64,000 nucleotides of DNA, taken from positions 248,001 to 312,000 of IMG/VR virus record IMGVR_UViG_3300024262_006558. The stretch is one strand, 5' to 3'. The translations under genes and the position numbers were made by a program. The notes beneath the pieces were generated by a model. That model searched no databases. It was not told the DNA's origin and worked only from the letters and a program-made list of their open reading frames with translations. Position 1 is the stretch's first letter; each line of letters begins with the position of its first letter. Below, in pieces: positions 16,499 to 49,872 of this stretch.

Positions 16499-16500
16499 AC

Positions 16501-16538
16501 AAAAAAACCCTCATCTAATTAAAGATGAGGGTTTTTTA
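16501..16538. terminator. bidirectional intrinsic terminator
   Basis: AAAAAAACCCTCATCT...AGATGAGGGTTTTTT between convergent units. Confidence 0.8.
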
Positions 16539-16570
16539 TTTGCATACTACTATGGAAACTAACATGCTTG

Positions 16571-16671
16571 TGGGGGCGGAATAGATTCGAACTATCGACA
16601 CACTGGCTTTCACACCGAGCTGCTCTCAAGATCACGCCTCAAGGACGGATACCAAACTGAGCTACACCCCC
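16571..16671 (-). tRNA. non-canonical tRNA-like gene, copy 1 (Phe-like; D-loop hairpin insertion, 8-nt anticodon loop)
   Basis: Acceptor GGGGGTG/CGCCCCC, TAGCTCAGTTTGGT, GAGC, T-loop TTCGAAT; 23-nt insert in the D loop. Confidence 0.65.
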
Positions 16672-16697: not shown

Positions 16698-16797
16698 TGG
16701 GAACGGAATAGATTCGAACTATCGACACACTGGCTTTCACACCGAGCTGCTCTCAAGACTAACATCAAGTGTTAGCACCAGACTGAGCTACATTCCC
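16698..16797 (-). tRNA. non-canonical tRNA-like gene, copy 2
   Basis: Acceptor GGGAATG/CGTTCCC; same anticodon and T arms as copy 1; 22-nt D-loop hairpin. Confidence 0.65.
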
Positions 16798-16892
16798 ATG
16801 TAGTTAAAGATATAAAGGAAATTTGGAGAACTTGTTTTTTAATTTAAGATAATTTTTTAGAAGGAAGTCCAAGCATAGCCTTTAATCTTTTG

Positions 16893-16992
16893 TGGGAACG
16901 GAATAGATTCGAACTATCGACACACTGGCTTTCACACCGAGCTGCTCTCAAGACTAACATCAAGTGTTAGCACCAGACTGAGCTACATTCCC
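16893..16992 (-). tRNA. non-canonical tRNA-like gene, copy 3 (identical to copy 2)
   Basis: Direct 100-nt duplicate of 16698-16797. Confidence 0.65.
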
Positions 16993-17305
16993 ATATGTAA
17001 TAGGGGCTTATTTCGGATTTCATTCCGAGATAGATTCCCATATTAAGATTGTTGTTAAGAAGAAACCCTCTTGGTATCTTTATCCCTTATCAACAATACA
17101 AAAGTACTGTTTAAATATCATATTGTCAAGCATTAGATAGAAAAAAGTTTAAAAAGTTTTCTCTCCTCTGAGTTTTTCCGCAACTTCGTATACATAACCC
17201 TTTATCCATCAGACATTAAACTCAAAAAGCTGAAAAACAAAGTTTTCCTATAAGTACATAATATCCCCTCCACCGTATATATTGTCGAACGAAAAAGAAA
17301 CACTT

Positions 17306-26988: not shown

Positions 26989-28181
26989 TCTCGCTAAAGT
27001 CTAAGAATTTTAAAGTTTCCACTTTGGAAACCTGGGTTTTAAAGTTTTTTCGTTGGTTGAAAAACCATGAGGATTTCTGGTGGAAAATCTTGGGCAAATT
27101 GAGTCGCTTTTCTAGAACGCCCCCAGCCCACAAAATGTACTTTTACTCTCCTTCCCTCCAAAAAAACCAATTTTACCTCTTAAAAACCTTTTTTACACCA
27201 AACATACCGCCTAAGTCTCCCCCTAATATAAGCCATTCTAAGCCCCTATAATCTCCCTATTAATACATCATTAATAAGTCTTAAAAACCTCTCTAAAAAC
27301 CTCTTATATATGCACCTATTAACACGTCTATATACTGGGTTAAATCGGGTTAAAAAGTACTCTATTTCTTCATGTGAATAACCTACTCTTTTTACACACA
27401 TATTCACACATATTTTTACATACTTCCTCTCCCTAATTTGGACCTCTCCCTGTGTGGTAAAAAGCGATCAGATTTAGGGCATAAAACCGATGTTAAAAAA
27501 GGGGTTTTGGCGACCCCTTTTTACCATAGAATAACTACCATAATTAATGGCGTAAAAACCTCTAATAACCCTATCCTTTTACTGGGTGTGAAAACGCTCA
27601 AATCACACCTCTCCCTGCCCTATATAATACACCACAATAAACAGCCTATTAATAAGTCATTTTAAGCTCTTCTAAGCGACTCGATTATACATCTGGGGTA
27701 ATGAGTTATTATCTACATAAAAACGTTATTATACATGCTTATATCTAACCTCTCCCTATTCGTAGATTTAAGTCATATACAATTTTGTTGGGGTTTATTT
27801 GTAAGTAATATTTTTTATTAATATTTATTCATGTAACCCTTAATCAGAGGGGGGTTTAGGAAGCTTCAACATAGTTGAATGAAGACTACACTTTTAAACT
27901 ACGTTCCTCAATAGCACGGGTACTAATTACGAAGCATCTCTATAATACTTGGAGGTTCAATGCTAAGTCTGTTTCTATTTTTTCCAAAGGGGGTTGTTGA
28001 TGGGGCAGAGCCTAAACTCAATCGTACTGACTTGACTGACAGCAAGACGAAGGTTAATAAAACAATTCTCAAATCTCTTTCTAACGAAGGGGGTTTGGGG
28101 GTTGTTGTTTAAGACCTACCTCTTCTCACCAGCCTTACTTCCAGCAAATAATTTACTGTCTACAATAGGCATGTATATTAC

Positions 28182-45774: not shown

Positions 45775-46389
45775 TTAATACTTTTTGTTTTTAATATGAG
45801 TCAAAAATTTTTGATATATTTCCATGTGCTTAAGTCGATGAGCTATGGTAAGTGCGCAGTCTTGTAACACATCAGTCTCAAGAGGGTCTGCTCCTTTTTC
45901 CAATAACAGATCAACAACTACTTCCAGGTTATTCTGAACGGCGTACATAAGCGCCGTTCTACCATCTTTATTCTTTTTATGAACATCTGCTCCACTTCTT
46001 ATGAGAAAGCTTACTAGGACGAAGTTTAAACCTCTTATAGCATGAGTAAGCGGTGTGTCTAGATCTTCATCAACGTTATTGATGTTTGCTCCGTGTTTAA
46101 TAAGAATTTTGGCTATTTCTGTATGACCATGATAGCATGCATCCATCAGAGCGGTTTGTTTGTAACCTCTTTTATCGAAAGCTTTATCTGGTTTAACTCC
46201 AGATTTAATTAATTTATCTGCAGTTTTTCCATACCCATGAACACAGGCCCAAGTCAACATAATTTCACCATCCAGATCAAACACAAAACTATCAAAAAAC
46301 TCTTGGGAGAAGTCTTTTATATTCTCATAATATTCAGACCAATTAGATACCCTATCAGCTTGTTCTATAAATTCTTCTTCAGTGTACAT
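45775..46389 (-). CDS. ankyrin-repeat protein with Trp head
   Basis: TEEEFIEQADRVSNW; GRTALMYAVQNNLEVVVDLLLEKGADP. Confidence 0.9.
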   Translation of the reverse strand: MYTEEEFIEQADRVSNWSEYYENIKDFSQEFFDSFVFDLDGEIMLTWACVHGYGKTADKLIKSGVKPDKAFDKRGYKQTALMDACYHGHTEIAKILIKHGANINNVDEDLDTPLTHAIRGLNFVLVSFLIRSGADVHKKNKDGRTALMYAVQNNLEVVVDLLLEKGADPLETDVLQDCALTIAHRLKHMEIYQKFLTHIKNKKY

Positions 46390-46423
46390 ATTGACAAATA
46401 TAGTTTTGTTATGCCAATAAAAC

Positions 46424-46458
46424 AAAAAAGACCTAAACTTTCGCTTAGGTCTTTTTTT
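46424..46458. terminator. intrinsic terminator (bidirectional)
   Basis: AAAAAAGACCTAA...TTAGGTCTTTTTTT. Confidence 0.7.
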
Positions 46459-46881: not shown

Positions 46882-47370
46882 TTATTTTATTAAAAAAAGC
46901 TTTGCGCATGCAATAGCATCTGATAAAGCTTCATGGTGATCAAGTTCTATTTTATGTTTACTACAACATTCATTTAATTTAGTTGACTTATAACCTTTGT
47001 CTTTAAACTTCTTCATAGTACATTCCCACTTCTCAGACAATTTCAATTCCGTATAGTCTAAACCATATAATTCCATTGTTGCTTTTAGAACACTACGATC
47101 AAACACTTCATTATGAGCAACTAATATATTTCCTTGAAGCCTTCTTTTGATCTCTGGATACAGCTCTTTGAAAGTTTTAGCGTTAGCTGTGTCTTTAGCA
47201 GTTAATCCATGAACCTTTGTATTGGCCCAAGAATATTTATTACCTGGAGGTTTAATTAAAGCTTGGTACTCATGAGCTATTACACCATCCTTTACCATAA
47301 CTATTCCTACTGAACAAGCGGAGTTACGCTTACCTGTAGCGGTTTCAAAATCAATAGCAACAAAGTTCAT
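46882..47370 (-). CDS. DEDDh 3'-5' exonuclease (DnaQ-like)
   Basis: AIDFETA, VAHNEVFDRSVL, HHEALSDA. Confidence 0.9.
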   Translation of the reverse strand: MNFVAIDFETATGKRNSACSVGIVMVKDGVIAHEYQALIKPPGNKYSWANTKVHGLTAKDTANAKTFKELYPEIKRRLQGNILVAHNEVFDRSVLKATMELYGLDYTELKLSEKWECTMKKFKDKGYKSTKLNECCSKHKIELDHHEALSDAIACAKLFLIK

Positions 47371-47386
47371 AATAATATTTTATTTG

Positions 47387-47531
47387 CAGAGAAGATAGGC
47401 CTCGAACCTACAAGGATTTAAAGAAATAATCTCCAACTATTCACGTTTATAGTTTGTCCACCGAGTTCCCCCACTCTATACGTTTCTTCAAGGGTACTGT
47501 CAGCGTGGTTGCCAAATTTCACCACTTCTCT
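47387..47531 (-). tRNA. tRNA-like gene with Leu/Ser-type D arm and enlarged central region; anticodon undefined
   Basis: Acceptor AGAGAAG/CTTCTCT, TGGTGAAATTTGGCAACCAC, T arm GTAGG-TTCGAGG-CCTAT; 145 nt long. Confidence 0.55.
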
Positions 47532-47538
47532 ATTTTTG

Positions 47539-47672
47539 CGTTCTCGGCAGGACTCGAACCTGCAACCCCCTGTTTGGAAATGTAGAAGGAAGACTTGAAC
47601 ATAGCCAATGGTCTTAGGTAATTGTCATGTCTAAACGATAGACAGGTGCTCTACCAGTTGAGCTACGAGAAC
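47539..47672 (-). tRNA. tRNA-Gly(UCC)-like gene interrupted by a 61-nt insertion in the anticodon loop
   Basis: GTTCTCG/CGAGAAC acceptor, GCTC/GAGC D stem, CCTGT-CT-[61 nt, 47579-47639]-TCC-AA-ACAGG, GCAGG-TTCGAGT-CCTGC. Confidence 0.75.
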
Positions 47673-47685
47673 ATAAATACTTAGC

Positions 47686-49761
47686 TTATGCTAAGTATTC
47701 TGAGTTAATTACATCGATATCGTAAGGCGTGATTTTACCTTCAGCGACTTCCCAAGAGAAGACGGTGTCGGCATCCTCTGCCTTGTCCACGAATTCGGTA
47801 CCTCTAGCTTCTGCATGAAGTCTGAATAACTGGTGCAATGTAGGTTTATTTTCCAAACTTAACATTGCTTCAAGCAAATCTGTAGTAGTTGCTTTGTTTG
47901 ACTCTAAATTAATAGGTCCAATGCTACCACTTCTCTCATTATGAGCAAGGTCACACCATACAGCTTCTCTTGTTTCTAAATCAAACACTACAGGAAGTGC
48001 TACTTTTGACTCTGAAGATAGATCAATCTTTTGATTAACAGTCTTAGCATCATATATCTCATTTGCATTTGGTTTAGACTTCATCATCCACCCAGCATAA
48101 CAAGATTCCATTTCACAATAACTAATATCAGAGAAAGAGTAAACATGCATCACAACATATCTAACTCCTTTTTCAAGAGCATCTTTAATACTGAAGTCAA
48201 CAAACTCTGCAGCTCCAGCTGGAGAAGGGGCTCTAGTTATATCTCCACCATGAACCGCTTGAACTTTATTACCTCTCAACCTAGTATAGCTTACTTGATC
48301 CACCATAGTGAAATCTTCTTTATGGAAAGATGCACTTAAATCAACATCTTGTCCAATCCAGTGGATAAACATTCTCACTGTATCTTTAGTGCCTAAATTC
48401 ATTCTAGTACCTCTAGCAACAGTGAACAATCCGCTAGAAGCATTTCTTTGCTGTAAAGGAAGTGGGCAAGACTTAAGTTTTGGATCTAAATATACCTTTC
48501 CAAGGTCCTCACCTTCAGAAAATTTAGTAACCAATACCTTTTCAATACCTTTTACCAACTTATTTACAGTTGCGTTACCGAAAGCTGGCAATTCATTTCT
48601 AAGAATTATAGCCTTAGCTACGCTTCCTTTAGGAAACACCACTCTTTTATCGATAGCAGATGAACCTTTTCTAGCATTGAAGTGTCCCAGTAACTGGAAC
48701 AACACTCTAGTTGATACTTTATTCGCTACAGAAAGAAAAGTTTCTATTGTTTTCGTTCTTGATCTCTCATGGAGTCTCAAGATATGATCCAATCTCCTTG
48801 CAAACTCACCTGGCCTATTAGATAACAGATCAAGTATTTCTGTGGCATTTCCATTATCAAGAGCGTTTTCAACTTTAGAGTTGAAAGTCTCAAGAGATTT
48901 GTTTTCTCTGATCTTTTGAGCAATTTCGAAAACTTTTGGTGCCTTAGTCTTGTACTCACCAACATGTAAACTATGGAATAATTTACCCCATTTGTTTTTA
49001 TGTCGATTAATATCATCTTCATTAATAACGTTTTCCAACGTTGAAACGAATAACTTTCTAGCACTTCTCGGCAAAGATCTAAACTTAGTATTCTGAGCAA
49101 GAGAAACGTCTCCATCAGAAAGGTAAGTTATAACCCTCAATACGTCTGTAGCCGTTTTAATGCAGCCAGTTATGTCTTGATTTTTTTCAAGAAGCTTACC
49201 TACAATAAGGCATAAATTCTCTTTGAATGGTATCTCTGTTGGATACTCTTGAGTATCATGTTTGTCAATAAACCATTCAACAATTGTTCTGTCTTCATCA
49301 GAGATAGAAGCATTTGATCCAACAAGTCTTGTAAAGACTTTATTGAAATCCTCCTCAGCTTTTAACTCTAGAGTCTTAAATGTTGTTTCTTCATAGGCAA
49401 ACTGTTTTGGCAAAGCCTCATAGTTTGGCTTCCAAGTACCATTTGACCAGTAATGCAAAATAGCATTACGATAAAGTTCTGCATCTTCCATCTCCATCAC
49501 TTGCTGAGGAAAATTTGGATAAAGAGGAACATACTTTTTATCTGCACCTTTCATCTCTTTCAAGACAGGTATTAGTTCATTATAAAGAGCTTCCGCAGCA
49601 TCTTCAGATAATGACTTAACAGCATTAAGTAAATCTTCAGACATAATATACCCTAACTGCATCAATGACGCATTAAGAGAAAGGGCAATTTGTTCATTAC
49701 CTTCATCTTGTGGATTTACAACTATTCCATTAAGTTTCTTTACAGATATTATAGTCTTCAT
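47686..49761 (-). CDS. TerD-domain-containing protein (Ter stress-response associated)
   Basis: C-terminal DVDLSASF...HGGDITRAP...AAEFVDF TerD fold; N-terminal LYPNFP...LHYW...RPGEFARRLDHILR. Confidence 0.75.
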   Translation of the reverse strand: MKTIISVKKLNGIVVNPQDEGNEQIALSLNASLMQLGYIMSEDLLNAVKSLSEDAAEALYNELIPVLKEMKGADKKYVPLYPNFPQQVMEMEDAELYRNAILHYWSNGTWKPNYEALPKQFAYEETTFKTLELKAEEDFNKVFTRLVGSNASISDEDRTIVEWFIDKHDTQEYPTEIPFKENLCLIVGKLLEKNQDITGCIKTATDVLRVITYLSDGDVSLAQNTKFRSLPRSARKLFVSTLENVINEDDINRHKNKWGKLFHSLHVGEYKTKAPKVFEIAQKIRENKSLETFNSKVENALDNGNATEILDLLSNRPGEFARRLDHILRLHERSRTKTIETFLSVANKVSTRVLFQLLGHFNARKGSSAIDKRVVFPKGSVAKAIILRNELPAFGNATVNKLVKGIEKVLVTKFSEGEDLGKVYLDPKLKSCPLPLQQRNASSGLFTVARGTRMNLGTKDTVRMFIHWIGQDVDLSASFHKEDFTMVDQVSYTRLRGNKVQAVHGGDITRAPSPAGAAEFVDFSIKDALEKGVRYVVMHVYSFSDISYCEMESCYAGWMMKSKPNANEIYDAKTVNQKIDLSSESKVALPVVFDLETREAVWCDLAHNERSGSIGPINLESNKATTTDLLEAMLSLENKPTLHQLFRLHAEARGTEFVDKAEDADTVFSWEVAEGKITPYDIDVINSEYLA

Positions 49762-49872
49762 ACTAATATTAAAATTTATGTTCAACCTTAGAAATATACT
49801 AACGTATTTCTATGTGATAATGTTGCAAATATAATGTAAAATTTAATTCAGGTCAAGTAAAAGAATAGATTT

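What the first reader, a model, noticed from the sequence alone, without database searches (positions are those of the whole stretch)
47539..47672. tRNA-Gly(UCC)-like gene split by a 61-nt insertion in the anticodon loop
Seen: removing 47579-47639 restores a textbook 73-nt cloverleaf with loop CT-TCC-AA. The insert has internal pairing (AAGAC...GTCTT) and sits at about position 33/34. Other excision registers would give ACC or ATC anticodons, and the discriminator is G rather than the U typical of bacterial tRNA-Gly. Established: bacterial tRNA introns are normally self-splicing group I/II introns of 200 nt or more, while short protein-spliced introns are archaeal or eukaryotic, mostly at 37/38. 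Inference: a short intron needing a trans-acting nuclease/ligase, e.g. matured only after cleavage by host anticodon nucleases or by a phage RNA-repair system.
Basis: partly seen in the sequence, partly recalled or inferred. Interest (0 to 1): 0.78.

Follow-up and report, generated by a model that had tools for sequence, protein, structure and literature searches.

The report
Phage tRNA interrupted by conserved RNA module
A giant bacteriophage carries a real tRNA gene whose anticodon loop holds a 61-base copy of a previously undescribed structured RNA module; in many other phages the same module flanks one uncharacterised gene and brackets circularly permuted tRNA genes, which points to a possible phage-borne cut-and-rejoin system for tRNAs.

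Summary
Window 47672-47539 (minus strand) is a full tRNA (Rfam 55.6 bits) with about 61 nt inside the anticodon loop. Two related phages keep it at the same site, with covarying acceptor and anticodon stems, and only the UCC anticodon reading is conserved.

The insert is neither decay nor a group I or BHB intron. It is a circularly rearranged copy of a structured RNA module (GGCUAU, helix P1, CUUCCUUCUA, P1', (A)UUUCC, with an outer helix P0) that matches no Rfam family.

In 80 phage loci encoding homologs of the adjacent 699-aa gene, the module occurs 135 times on the gene strand and never on the opposite strand. Its helices covary strongly. In 21 of 23 long copies it brackets a circularly permuted tRNA gene. 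Cultured Rhodobacter and Ruegeria phages carry such units too.

The phage encodes T4-type Pnkp and Rnl1 but no RtcB, EndA or RNase III.

Best reading (inferred, about 0.45): the module marks where the tRNA is cut and rejoined. No RNA data show splicing, and a stable tRNA-scaffolded RNA that binds the neighbouring protein remains a serious rival.

The parts
47539..47672 (-). Interrupted tRNA gene 't2' (the finding): 134 nt, or 73 nt without the insert. Anticodon UCC if excised.
   Evidence: Rfam RF00005 at 55.6 bits covering the full model; ARAGORN -i; parsed cloverleaf; orthologs L037 12097-12231 and L038 6580-6718 with covarying stems.
47640..47672 (-). 5' part: acceptor 5' strand 47672-47666, D arm 47663-47648, anticodon-stem 5' strand CCUGU 47646-47642, then loop bases C32 U33 at 47641-47640.
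   Evidence: CU is conserved in all three orthologs.
47580..47640 (-). It overlaps U33 of the 5' part by one base because the register is ambiguous. The true boundaries are unknown, somewhere between positions 31/32 and 33/34.
47625..47632 (-). Conserved AG followed by the P1 3' strand (GACAUGA). The G pairs with the C that precedes UUCCUUCUA.
   Evidence: By position it matches the invariant G of alignment A2. AGAC is conserved in L037 and L038.
47617..47623 (-). AAUUACC, this copy's version of the conserved (A)AUUUCC block. L037 reads AUUUCC.
47607..47616 (-). 10-nt cap loop that stands in for the outer helix P0 of the free-standing module.
   Evidence: Comparison with the P0 helices of the other copies.
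47601..47606 (-). Conserved block GGCUAU. Its GG can pair with the CC of the UUUCC block.
   Evidence: GGC is invariant in 57 aligned copies; nhmmer hit.
47592..47598 (-). P1 5' strand UCAAGUC; 6 of 7 positions pair with 47631-47625.
   Evidence: and direct reading.
47583..47591 (-). Conserved block UUCCUUCUA (with the preceding C it reads CUUCCUUCUA). It lies next to the presumed 3' junction.
   Evidence: Invariant in A2; identical in t9, L037 and L038.
47539..47579 (-). 3' part: UUCCAA 47579-47574 (the anticodon UCC plus A37 A38), anticodon-stem 3' strand ACAGG 47573-47569, variable loop, T arm 47563-47547, acceptor 3' strand 47546-47540, discriminator G 47539.
   Evidence: UUCCAA is invariant in the three orthologs while the adjacent linker varies.
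47686..49785 (-). 699-aa gene immediately upstream. It is the protein family whose genes are flanked by the module in other phages and is the candidate module-binding or processing factor.
   Evidence: phrog_33734; more than 2,000 homologs; homologs lie downstream of the motif; module on the gene strand in 59 of 80 loci; model with pLDDT 84.7 showing an EH-signature/ZorC-like helical N-terminal part and a TerD-like C-terminal part; partial NCBIfam RING_SCO0854 match.
47386..47531 (-). Second interrupted, type-II-like tRNA 't1', directly downstream. It has a different insert without the module.
   Evidence: ARAGORN -i; conserved in L037 and L134, with covarying arms and a nearly invariant interior; interior matched by metatranscriptome contigs.
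46882..47370 (-). DEDD / RNase T-family 3'-5' exonuclease gene directly downstream of the tRNA pair. The synteny is kept in L037 and L038.
   Evidence: Pfam PF00929, E 1.2e-17; synteny.
16796..16892 (-). Free-standing short-form copy of the module, with its core at 16858-16880. P0 is AAAGAUUAAA/UUUAUAUCUUU, P1 is UUGGA/UCCAA, and AUUUCC is present. It lies between two tRNA-like repeats.

Best explanation
Shown. The locus is a functional-looking, colinear tRNA gene of a 388.6-kb jumbo phage of bacteria. Its anticodon loop carries a 61-nt copy of a widespread structured phage RNA module with these parts: GGCUAU, helix P1, CUUCCUUCUA, P1', and (A)UUUCC. Free-standing copies also have an outer helix P0. 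In the tRNA, P0 is replaced by a cap loop and P1 would stack on the anticodon stem.

Inferred. The module marks where the RNA is cut and rejoined. In the colinear tRNAs of this phage (t2, t9 and a degenerate copy in t6) it would act as an intron. Cuts in the loop between P1 and the anticodon stem, followed by ligation, would give a tRNA reading GGA/GGG-type codons (anticodon UCC). In the circularly permuted tRNA genes of related phages, the same module is formed by the leader and the trailer. There it would direct end-joining into a circle, which RNase P and 3' trimming would then open at the acceptor stem.

This is the logic by which the archaeal and eukaryal BHB motif serves intron-containing and permuted tRNAs, but the RNA signal here is different. 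The neighbouring 699-aa protein is the best candidate for the factor that recognises the module. This rests on genomic association only, and no nuclease fold was recognised in it. The phage's own Pnkp and Rnl1 could heal and seal the ends.
For: 1. It is a real tRNA: 55.6 bits over the full model.
2. The insert is conserved at the same site in two related phages, and the acceptor and anticodon stems change with compensation. The loop halves CU and UUCCAA stay invariant next to variable linkers, so selection acts on the anticodon loop itself.
3. Two more interrupted tRNAs in the same genome carry the module: t9 has the identical GGCUAUGUU..GUCUUCCUUCUA, and t6 has a degenerate UUUCC/GGCUCU version. 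Their anticodons do not duplicate the 10 ordinary tRNAs.
4. In 80 loci with homologs of the 699-aa gene, 135 module copies lie on the gene strand in 59 loci and none on the other strand. The source genome has only 3 copies, all linked to tRNA or tRNA-like genes.
5. Covariation: 85.8% of cells are paired against 48% in shuffles (0 of 500 reach it) and 37-41% with slid partners. The three P1 pairs not imposed by my filter are paired in 46/50, 52/57 and 56/57 sequences, using all six pair types.
6. In 21 of 23 long copies a full cloverleaf spans the in-silico joined ends, so these are permuted tRNA genes. The bases flanking the anticodon stems look like loop halves (CU|CCAAA Trp, AU|GUGGA His, CUGUUAA Asn), and some units encode CCA.
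7. Cultured Rhodobacter phage RcXuper and Ruegeria phage RpAliso have such units, and Xanthomonas phage XacN1 has short forms.
8. Pnkp (E 7e-47) and Rnl1 are present. Weasels2 has RtcB 3 kb from the homolog, and RpAliso and RcXuper have a nucleotidyltransferase next to it.
Against: - No RNA evidence of a spliced or circular product: no joints were seen over t2 in four RNA runs, which held only fragments of relatives.
- No endonuclease has been identified. The 699-aa protein has no recognisable nuclease or ligase domain.
- About three quarters of module copies (74 of 97 units) enclose no tRNA at all, which a pure splicing signal does not explain.
- The distance from CUUCCUUCUA to the inferred junction varies between 5 and 8 nt, and several inferred loops are atypical (for example C37 in L051, or A34 anticodons).
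- The spliced body of t2 resembles Thr/Asn/Val/Lys-type phage tRNAs more than ordinary phage tRNA-Gly(UCC), and its discriminator is G.
- For the neighbour t1, which has a different insert, insert-containing RNA is what appears in metatranscriptome contigs. So retained inserts do occur in this kind of tRNA-like gene.
Confidence: 0.45

Rival explanations
1. Stable chimeric RNA that is never spliced. The tRNA, or the permuted tRNA-like domain, is a scaffold, and the module is the binding site for the 699-aa protein. Together they would form an RNA-protein particle comparable to bacterial Ro60 with its tRNA-like Y RNA (YrlA). Possible roles are tethering the protein to tRNA-handling enzymes, or acting as a decoy that anticodon nucleases cannot cut.
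For: - The permuted units have the YrlA topology: the acceptor stem is closed by a loop and the conserved stem is formed by the 5' and 3' ends.
- Most copies have no tRNA inside, and tandem copies flank the protein gene much as Y RNA genes flank rsr.
- Insert-containing t1-like RNA is present in RNA libraries.
- Phage Ro60 systems with tRNA-like partners are known (PMC7824862).
Against: - The protein is not TROVE/Ro60, by sequence or by fold.
- t2 keeps an open acceptor stem, and its anticodon-loop halves are conserved next to variable linkers, which a mere scaffold would not need.
- Several permuted units keep canonical loop halves and an encoded CCA.
- The anticodons of the interrupted tRNAs complement the ordinary set.
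Confidence: 0.3
2. Cis-acting punctuation or regulatory element of tRNA-cluster transcripts. The irregular stem of about 18-20 bp would be a processing site for a host RNase (RNase III or RNase E type), or a leader or antitermination element. Its presence in the anticodon loop of t2 would be secondary, so t2 would be cut into halves or would be non-functional.
For: - The module lies in 5' leaders, in one case directly downstream of a sigma-70-like promoter (L042/L117), and also after the gene and between tRNAs, always in the sense orientation.
- The invariant GG/CC pair extends P0, giving one long stem with a conserved pyrimidine mismatch.
- This resembles the way flanking stems define rRNA processing sites in bacteria (established knowledge).
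Against: - It does not explain why tRNA genes are permuted so that the module sits exactly at the anticodon loop in 21 of 23 long units.
- It does not explain the conservation of an intact tRNA body and loop halves around the insert in three phages.
- It does not explain the tight link to one protein family.
- The phage has no RNase III of its own.
Confidence: 0.15
3. The module is a small self-cleaving and self-ligating ribozyme of a new class that removes itself without protein.
For: It is 60-75 nt, occurs in tandem, is rich in phage intergenic DNA, and has invariant nucleotides at a helical junction. Known small ribozymes share this genomic behaviour.
Against: - No match to any Rfam ribozyme family.
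- Excision needs two cuts and a ligation.
- The invariant bases are mostly pyrimidines. The three invariant G are probably all base-paired: two with the CC of UUUCC, which is inferred, and one closing P1, which is counted.
- The strict link to a protein gene suggests dependence on a protein.
Confidence: 0.05
4. Decayed or disrupted tRNA pseudogene, with a chance or selfish insertion that has no function.
For: Default tRNA finders reject it, the discriminator and body are atypical for Gly, and no close relative exists in deposited phage genomes.
Against: All four stems are intact and covary across orthologs at 87% and 68% identity of the neighbouring protein. The insert's blocks are more conserved than the exons. 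The module has strong structural covariation and is strictly strand-specific.
Confidence: 0.03

Closest known systems
Archaeal and eukaryal BHB-dependent tRNA processing, which serves intron-containing, split and circularly permuted tRNA genes (for example Cyanidioschyzon merolae, Thermofilum pendens)
   Same: One RNA signal sits at the anticodon-loop junction in both colinear (intron) and permuted tRNA genes. In the permuted genes the 3' half comes first and the acceptor ends are joined by a short linker. A protein-dependent cut-and-ligate route through a circular intermediate is the natural reading.
   Different: - There is no bulge-helix-bulge (3-4-3) geometry. Instead there is a sequence-conserved module with a 7-bp P1 and invariant blocks GGCUAU, CUUCCUUCUA and UUUCC.
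- The inferred insertion point is 31/32 to 33/34, not 37/38.
- The setting is bacteriophages of bacteria.
- No EndA/Sen homolog is present.
- Splicing has not been demonstrated.
'Enigmatic' short introns in Lak megaphage tRNAs (Devoto et al. 2019, PMC6784885)
   Same: Short, non-group-I inserts in tRNA genes of huge phages. They are highly conserved where present, and no mechanism is known.
   Different: No shared motif, partner gene or permuted tRNAs were reported there. I could not compare sequences, so homology with the module is untested.
Bacterial and phage Ro60 (Rsr, TROVE) with tRNA-like Y RNAs (YrlA)
   Same: The non-coding RNA genes lie next to a protein gene. The RNA has a tRNA-like domain closed at the acceptor end, plus a conserved stem formed by the RNA's own ends. 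The system occurs in phages with RNA-repair genes (PMC7824862).
   Different: The partner protein is not TROVE/vWA. The conserved stem sequence is different and has no Rfam match. The finding itself is a colinear tRNA with open acceptor ends and intact anticodon-loop halves.
T4 Pnkp/Rnl1 repair of tRNA cleaved in the anticodon loop
   Same: The phage encodes both enzymes. [quoted passage not shown]
   Different: In T4 the break is made by a host defence nuclease in a mature host tRNA. Here the substrate would be the phage's own precursor, and the cutting enzyme is unknown.
Self-splicing group I introns in bacterial and phage tRNA genes
   Same: They also sit in the anticodon loop of a bacterial-type tRNA.
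   Different: The insert is 61 nt against 200 nt or more, with no group I core and no Rfam hit.

Membership tests
tRNA (Rfam RF00005) | Full cloverleaf scoring above the family's gathering score | tested here: met
   55.6 bits against 29, model positions 1-71, E 2.8e-9; 7/7 acceptor pairs.
tRNA (functional gene rather than pseudogene) | Stems maintained by compensatory change in orthologs | tested here: met
   Acceptor GUUCUCG/CGAGAAC against GCUCGUG/CGCGAGC. Anticodon stem CCUGU/ACAGG, CCUGG/CCAGG and UCUGA/UCAGA. Only three sequences were available.
BHB (archaeal/eukaryal) tRNA intron | Bulge-helix-bulge (3 nt, 4 bp, 3 nt) at the exon-intron junctions | tested here: not met
   Reading the junctions directly gives no 4-bp helix flanked by 3-nt bulges. 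The conserved helix P1 is 7 bp and is flanked by large asymmetric loops.
BHB (archaeal/eukaryal) tRNA intron | EndA/Sen splicing endonuclease available | tested here: not met
   PF01974 is absent from the phage genome, while the control search finds it in 4 archaea. The host is unknown, but related phages infect Proteobacteria and Actinobacteria.
BHB (archaeal/eukaryal) tRNA intron | Canonical position 37/38 | tested here: not met
   The 37/38 register gives AUC here and UUC in the orthologs. Only registers 31/32 to 33/34 give a conserved anticodon.
Group I self-splicing tRNA intron | Intron of 200 nt or more with the P1-P9 catalytic core | tested here: not met
   The insert is 61 nt, and no Rfam intron or ribozyme match appears even at E up to 10.
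Circularly permuted tRNA gene | 3' half upstream of the 5' half, with the acceptor strands joined by a linker | tested here: not met
   The finding itself is colinear. The feature is met in relatives: 21 of 23 long module units, and RcXuper and RpAliso.
Ro60/Y RNA (YrlA) ribonucleoprotein | Adjacent TROVE-domain (Ro60) protein | tested here: not met
   No Pfam TROVE hit. The predicted fold is an EH-signature-like helical part plus a TerD-like part.
Ro60/Y RNA (YrlA) ribonucleoprotein | tRNA-like domain closed at the acceptor end, with the protein-binding stem formed by the RNA's 5' and 3' ends | tested here: not met
   t2 has open acceptor ends and the module is internal. The permuted relatives do have this topology. 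Whether they stay uncut is unknown.
New phage RNA module (defined here) | Blocks GGCUAU, C-UUCCUUCU-A and (A)UUUCC joined by helix P1, with the closing C-G pair invariant | tested here: met
   All blocks are present in t2: GGCUAU 47606-47601, UUCCUUCUA 47591-47583, AAUUACC 47623-47617 (AUUUCC in L037), with P1 pairing at 6 of 7 positions. Their order is circularly rearranged and P0 is replaced by a cap loop.
New phage RNA module (defined here) | Lies on the same strand as, and next to, a gene of the 699-aa family | tested here: met
   t2 starts 13 nt after the gene's stop codon on the same strand. Family-wide there are 135 sense copies and 0 antisense copies.
T4-type tRNA heal-and-seal pathway | Pnkp (kinase plus 3'-phosphatase) and Rnl1 ligase encoded | tested here: met
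   HAD_PNKP E 6.9e-47 with AAA_33. RNA_lig_T4_1 by Pfam and TIGR02308. Whether they act on t2 was not tested.
Lak megaphage tRNA introns | Sequence or structural homology of the inserts | not tested
   Only the paper's text was read. No Lak intron sequences were compared.

The most novel reading that the evidence does not exclude
Bacteriophages carry their own tRNA cut-and-rejoin system, the first outside archaea and eukaryotes that does not rely on self-splicing introns. It would consist of a sequence-specific RNA signal (the GGCUAU/CUUCCUUCUA/UUUCC module), a dedicated and so far uncharacterised ~700-aa protein, and phage ligases. It would mature both intron-containing and circularly permuted tRNA genes. 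Such tRNA genes are missed by standard gene finders, and their precursors lack an intact anticodon loop of the kind host anticodon nucleases cut.
Probability: 0.4. Interest if true: 0.93.

Novelty: new variant of a known kind. Interest (0 to 1): 0.86.

Why it matters
Short protein-spliced tRNA introns and permuted tRNA genes are regarded as archaeal and eukaryotic features. In the literature I could search, no paper reports permuted tRNA genes in bacteria or their phages, and the only phage precedent is the unexplained 'enigmatic introns' of Lak megaphages.

This analysis gives those oddities a concrete, testable framework: a defined RNA module, a defined partner gene with more than 2,000 homologs, and cultured phage-host pairs that carry it (Rhodobacter capsulatus with RcXuper, Ruegeria pomeroyi with RpAliso, and Xanthomonas citri with XacN1).

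If the module directs splicing, several things follow:
- It would be a new RNA-processing pathway with a new enzyme.
- Phage tRNA repertoires would be systematically under-counted.
- It would suggest a way for phages to keep tRNA precursors out of reach of host anticodon nucleases, because the precursors lack an anticodon loop until they are processed.

If the RNA is instead a stable RNA-protein particle, it would be a second system, unrelated to Ro60, built on a tRNA-like scaffold. Either way the module deserves a place in RNA family databases and in tRNA gene finders.

Tried and rejected
- **Known RNA families.** Rfam scans of the window, the locus and six motif-bearing loci found only tRNA. 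Group I intron, hammerhead, twister, pistol, hatchet and Y RNA are therefore not supported.
- **BHB intron.** Rejected by reading the junctions and by the absence of EndA.
- **Asp(AUC) reading at 37/38.** Rejected because it is not conserved.
Rejected because it is not conserved.
- **General phage promoter.** Rejected. The 388.6-kb genome has only 3 copies, and in L042/L117 the motif follows a sigma-70-like promoter.
- **Leader peptide starting at the ATG inside GGCUAUG.** Rejected because the spacing varies by 1 nt and shifts the frame.
- **Sigma-54 promoter (GG-N10-GC).** Fits only some copies.
- **Ro60/TROVE identity of the 699-aa protein.** Rejected.
- **RNA evidence.** No run holds the phage as RNA. 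Read laying on four metatranscriptomes gave no joints over t2.
- **Complex prediction on the protein plus t2 RNA.** The tool did not fold it, so there is no evidence either way.
- **First searches that found nothing.** The first strict motif pattern and a single-protein locus search both returned nothing, as did blastn against deposited phages.
- **My own errors, corrected.** A G3:U70 'alanine' argument for L084 was wrong, because the G-U pair is at 2:71. ARAGORN's 'interrupted tRNAs' at L092 5745-5887 and L098 5526-5774 are junctions of adjacent module units, not colinear interrupted tRNAs.
- **Body-similarity test for Gly identity.** Inconclusive or negative.
- **Function of the protein.** A PDB profile search and the protein atlas added nothing.
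Full report
**1. The observation**

Rfam's tRNA model matches window 47672-47539 on the minus strand from end to end. The score is 55.6 bits against a gathering score of 29, with E 2.8e-9 for the window, and the alignment skips 66 nt in the anticodon loop. Default ARAGORN calls nothing in the window. With introns allowed it calls tRNA-Gly(UCC) with a 61-nt insert.

**2. Source**

The window is bases 248001-312000 of a 388,594-bp virus record. The record encodes a T4-like baseplate wedge protein and NAD-salvage-type enzymes and uses the standard genetic code. Its DNA comes from a subsurface metagenome.

Ten ordinary tRNA genes lie in a cluster at 373.6-376.7 kb. Intron-aware ARAGORN adds four interrupted ones:
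- t2, the finding;
- t1, directly downstream at window 47531-47386;
- t6, at genome 375437-375557;
- t9, at genome 375866-375996.

Their anticodons do not duplicate those of the ordinary set.

**3. The insert is conserved, not decayed**

Two contigs from related phages keep the same gene order: the 699-aa gene, then the interrupted tRNA, then an RNase T-like exonuclease gene. Their homologs of the 699-aa protein are 87% (L037) and 68% (L038) identical to the window's.

- The insert is at the same site in both.
- The acceptor stem changes with compensation (GUUCUCG/CGAGAAC against GCUCGUG/CGCGAGC).
- The anticodon stem does the same (CCUGU/ACAGG, CCUGG/CCAGG, UCUGA/UCAGA).
- Next to the stem, CU on the 5' side and UUCCAA on the 3' side are invariant, while the adjoining linkers vary. 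The reading AUC becomes UUC in the relatives, so only UCC is conserved.
- L038 has the U73 typical of bacterial tRNA-Gly.
- The spliced body is not especially similar to ordinary phage tRNA-Gly(UCC) genes, so the amino-acid identity stays open.

**4. The insert belongs to a family**

t2 and t9 share GGCUAUGUU(2-3 nt)GUCUUCCUUCUA. A third copy lies at window 16880-16858, just 3' of a tRNA-like repeat that neither tool called. A profile scan finds only these three copies in the genome, all on the minus strand. t6 carries a degenerate version with UUUCC, GGCUCU and a CUGAC/GUUAG helix (read directly).

**5. Link to a protein family**

A pattern scan of IMG/VR found the motif in eight contigs, six of them convincing. 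In three of these the motif lies about 60-66 nt upstream of ORFs of 701-735 aa. Those ORFs are homologs (34-46% identity, E from 1e-115 to 0) of the 699-aa ORF that ends 13 nt before t2.

A family alignment then retrieved 80 loci.
- 56 of them contain tRNA genes: 264 in total, all on the gene's strand.
- A regular expression for the motif finds 135 copies in 59 loci on the gene strand and none on the opposite strand in 620 kb.
- Copies sit mostly just upstream of the gene, often in tandem, or just downstream of it.
- In L042/L117 the motif starts about 12 nt after a TTGACA-17-TAGAAT promoter, so it is probably transcribed as RNA.

**6. Structure of the module**

Aligned copies show this order: P0 5' strand, GGCUAU, P1 5' strand, CUUCCUUCUA, a variable interior, P1 3' strand, (A)UUUCC, P0 3' strand.

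On 57 short copies, 85.8% of cells are paired, against 48.2% in shuffles (0 of 500 shuffles reach it) and 37-41% when partners are slid. Twelve of 13 pairs change on both sides.

There is a caveat. My extraction required the three innermost P0 pairs and four P1 pairs, so those pairs are partly circular evidence. The three P1 pairs not required by the filter are still paired in 46/50, 52/57 and 56/57 sequences, using all six pair types. About 82-84% of motif copies passed the filter.

The invariant GG and CC can extend P0, which would give an irregular stem of about 18-20 bp. No Rfam family matches the module.

**7. Permuted tRNA genes**

Unit lengths are bimodal, at about 56-103 nt and 127-144 nt. 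The long units contain, in order:
1. an anticodon-stem 3' strand;
2. a variable loop;
3. a T arm;
4. an acceptor 3' strand;
5. a short linker;
6. an acceptor 5' strand;
7. a D arm;
8. an anticodon-stem 5' strand.

Joining the interior head to tail lets ARAGORN find a full cloverleaf across the junction in 21 of 23 units. Where I could place the stems, the flanking bases look like anticodon-loop halves:
- CU|CCAAA, a Trp loop;
- AU|GUGGA, a His loop;
- AU|AGGGA;
- a complete CUGUUAA (Asn) loop in four units that are the permuted counterparts of this phage's t9, with a covarying stem.

Some units encode CCA after the discriminator. Exact junctions cannot be fixed from sequence alone.

Cultured phages also carry the module, unannotated in their records. 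Rhodobacter phage RcXuper and Ruegeria phage RpAliso have such permuted units, and Xanthomonas phage XacN1 has short forms. This establishes the system as one of bacterial phages.

**8. How t2 fits**

Read around the circle, t2's insert has the same blocks in the same cyclic order:
- AG plus the P1 3' strand (47632-47625);
- AAUUACC (47623-47617; AUUUCC in L037);
- a 10-nt cap loop in place of P0 (47616-47607);
- GGCUAU (47606-47601);
- the P1 5' strand (47598-47592);
- UUCCUUCUA (47591-47583);
- three bases, then UUCCAA and the anticodon-stem 3' strand.

In both the colinear and the permuted genes, therefore, the module joins the tRNA at the anticodon loop. ARAGORN's 'interrupted tRNAs' at L098 and L092 are junctions of neighbouring units. 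So the colinear form is confirmed so far only in this lineage. t2 is not such an artefact, because its two halves pair and covary with each other.

**9. Enzymes**

- The phage encodes a T4-type Pnkp (kinase plus HAD_PNKP phosphatase, E 6.9e-47) and an Rnl1 ligase.
- It lacks RtcB, EndA, RNase III and a CCA-adding enzyme.
- The 699-aa protein is present in one copy and has no Pfam domain.
- Its model is confident (pLDDT 84.7, pTM 0.80). It shows a helical N-terminal part resembling ZorC EH-signature and DUF4132 proteins and a TerD-like C-terminal sandwich. No solved structure covers the whole protein.
- NCBIfam relates residues 295-673 to the MXAN_6230/SCO0854 RING-domain family, below that family's cutoff.
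- No nuclease or ligase fold is recognisable.

**10. Interpretation**

Shown:
- a real, conserved, interrupted tRNA;
- a new structured RNA module;
- its strict association with one protein family;
- permuted tRNA genes bracketed by the module.

Inferred:
- that the module directs cutting and rejoining;
- that the neighbouring protein recognises the module;
- that Pnkp and Rnl1 seal the ends.

The main rival is a stable tRNA-scaffolded RNA-protein particle of the Y RNA type. It is favoured by the many modules that enclose no tRNA, and by insert-containing t1-like RNA in metatranscriptome contigs.

**11. Literature**

The Lak megaphage paper reports 'enigmatic' tRNA introns without a mechanism (PMC6784885). 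A jumbo-phage survey describes Rnl, Pnkp and RtcB repair systems and Ro60/TROVE proteins with tRNA-like partners (PMC7824862). Searches for permuted tRNAs in phages or bacteria returned nothing relevant. Searches on the named phages did not point to this system by title or abstract, and I did not read those papers. The library does not cover all journals.

Noticed in passing
window 47386-47531 (-): A second interrupted, type-II-like tRNA (t1) lies 7 nt downstream of the finding. Its insert of about 54 nt lacks the module. A homolog in L134 has acceptor, D and T stems changed with compensation, while about 100 nt of the interior are nearly invariant. Contigs from four unrelated aquatic and marsh metatranscriptomes match its interior at 88-95% identity. 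Function unknown.
   Followed up: partly
window 16572-16671, 16699-16797, 16894-16992 (-): Three tRNA-like repeats of about 99 nt, with a hairpin of about 22 nt inserted in the D loop and an odd anticodon region. Rfam's tRNA model scores them at 20-22 bits, below threshold, and ARAGORN misses them. They are followed by an intrinsic terminator near 16500-16545 and lie antisense to the flanking protein genes.
   Followed up: partly
window 17008-17098 (-): A weak match to the Rfam 'drum' RNA (25.2 bits against a gathering score of 43, E 0.03), just upstream of the tRNA-like repeats.
   Followed up: no
L098 5526-5774; L092 5745-5887: Intron-aware tRNA finders can fuse the 5' half of one module-bracketed unit with the 3' half of the next, producing false 'intron-containing tRNAs'. 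In L098 a sigma-70-like promoter lies inside the supposed intron. L092 5697-5798 seems to hold only a tRNA 5' half (D arm plus anticodon stem) inside a module.
   Followed up: partly
L013 2792-3478 (-) = genome about 332276-332962: A 228-aa ORF with the C-terminal part of the class II PheRS alpha core and the ferredoxin-fold anticodon-binding domain. It lies two genes from the Rnl1 ligase and looks like a truncated or split phenylalanyl-tRNA synthetase-like protein in a phage that carries two tRNA-Phe genes.
   Followed up: no
window 45775-46425 (-); also L037 13372-20746: Several ankyrin-repeat proteins are encoded just downstream of the tRNA pair. A run of four to five such genes appears in the related contig, which is unusual for a phage of bacteria.
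   Followed up: no
L038 6320-6575: The more distant relative lacks t1. Instead it has about 250 nt of extra non-coding sequence between the 699-aa gene and the interrupted tRNA. This was not analysed and may be another structured RNA.
   Followed up: no
whole record; protein P0001: IMG/VR labels the 388.6-kb record a 'provirus' with 100% completeness, yet the identical 699-aa protein is also recorded on a 494-kb contig. The true genome ends and size may therefore differ. The gene strand and GC skew switch near window position 28000.
   Followed up: no
L047-L126 (several), genome 375340-375428: These phages often carry tRNAs with A at the wobble position (ACC, AGG, AGU, ACU, AAG, ACG). This is unusual for bacteria and may imply reliance on A-to-I editing or relaxed decoding.
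   Followed up: no
L130 10065-11249 (Rhodococcus phage Weasels2); L035 6344-7345 (RpAliso); L131 6958-7947 (RcXuper): Homologs of the 699-aa gene in cultured phages have RNA-end-processing genes nearby. Weasels2 has RtcB ('tRNA splicing ligase') about 3 kb downstream. RpAliso and RcXuper have a tRNA nucleotidyltransferase as the next gene on the same strand.
   Followed up: partly
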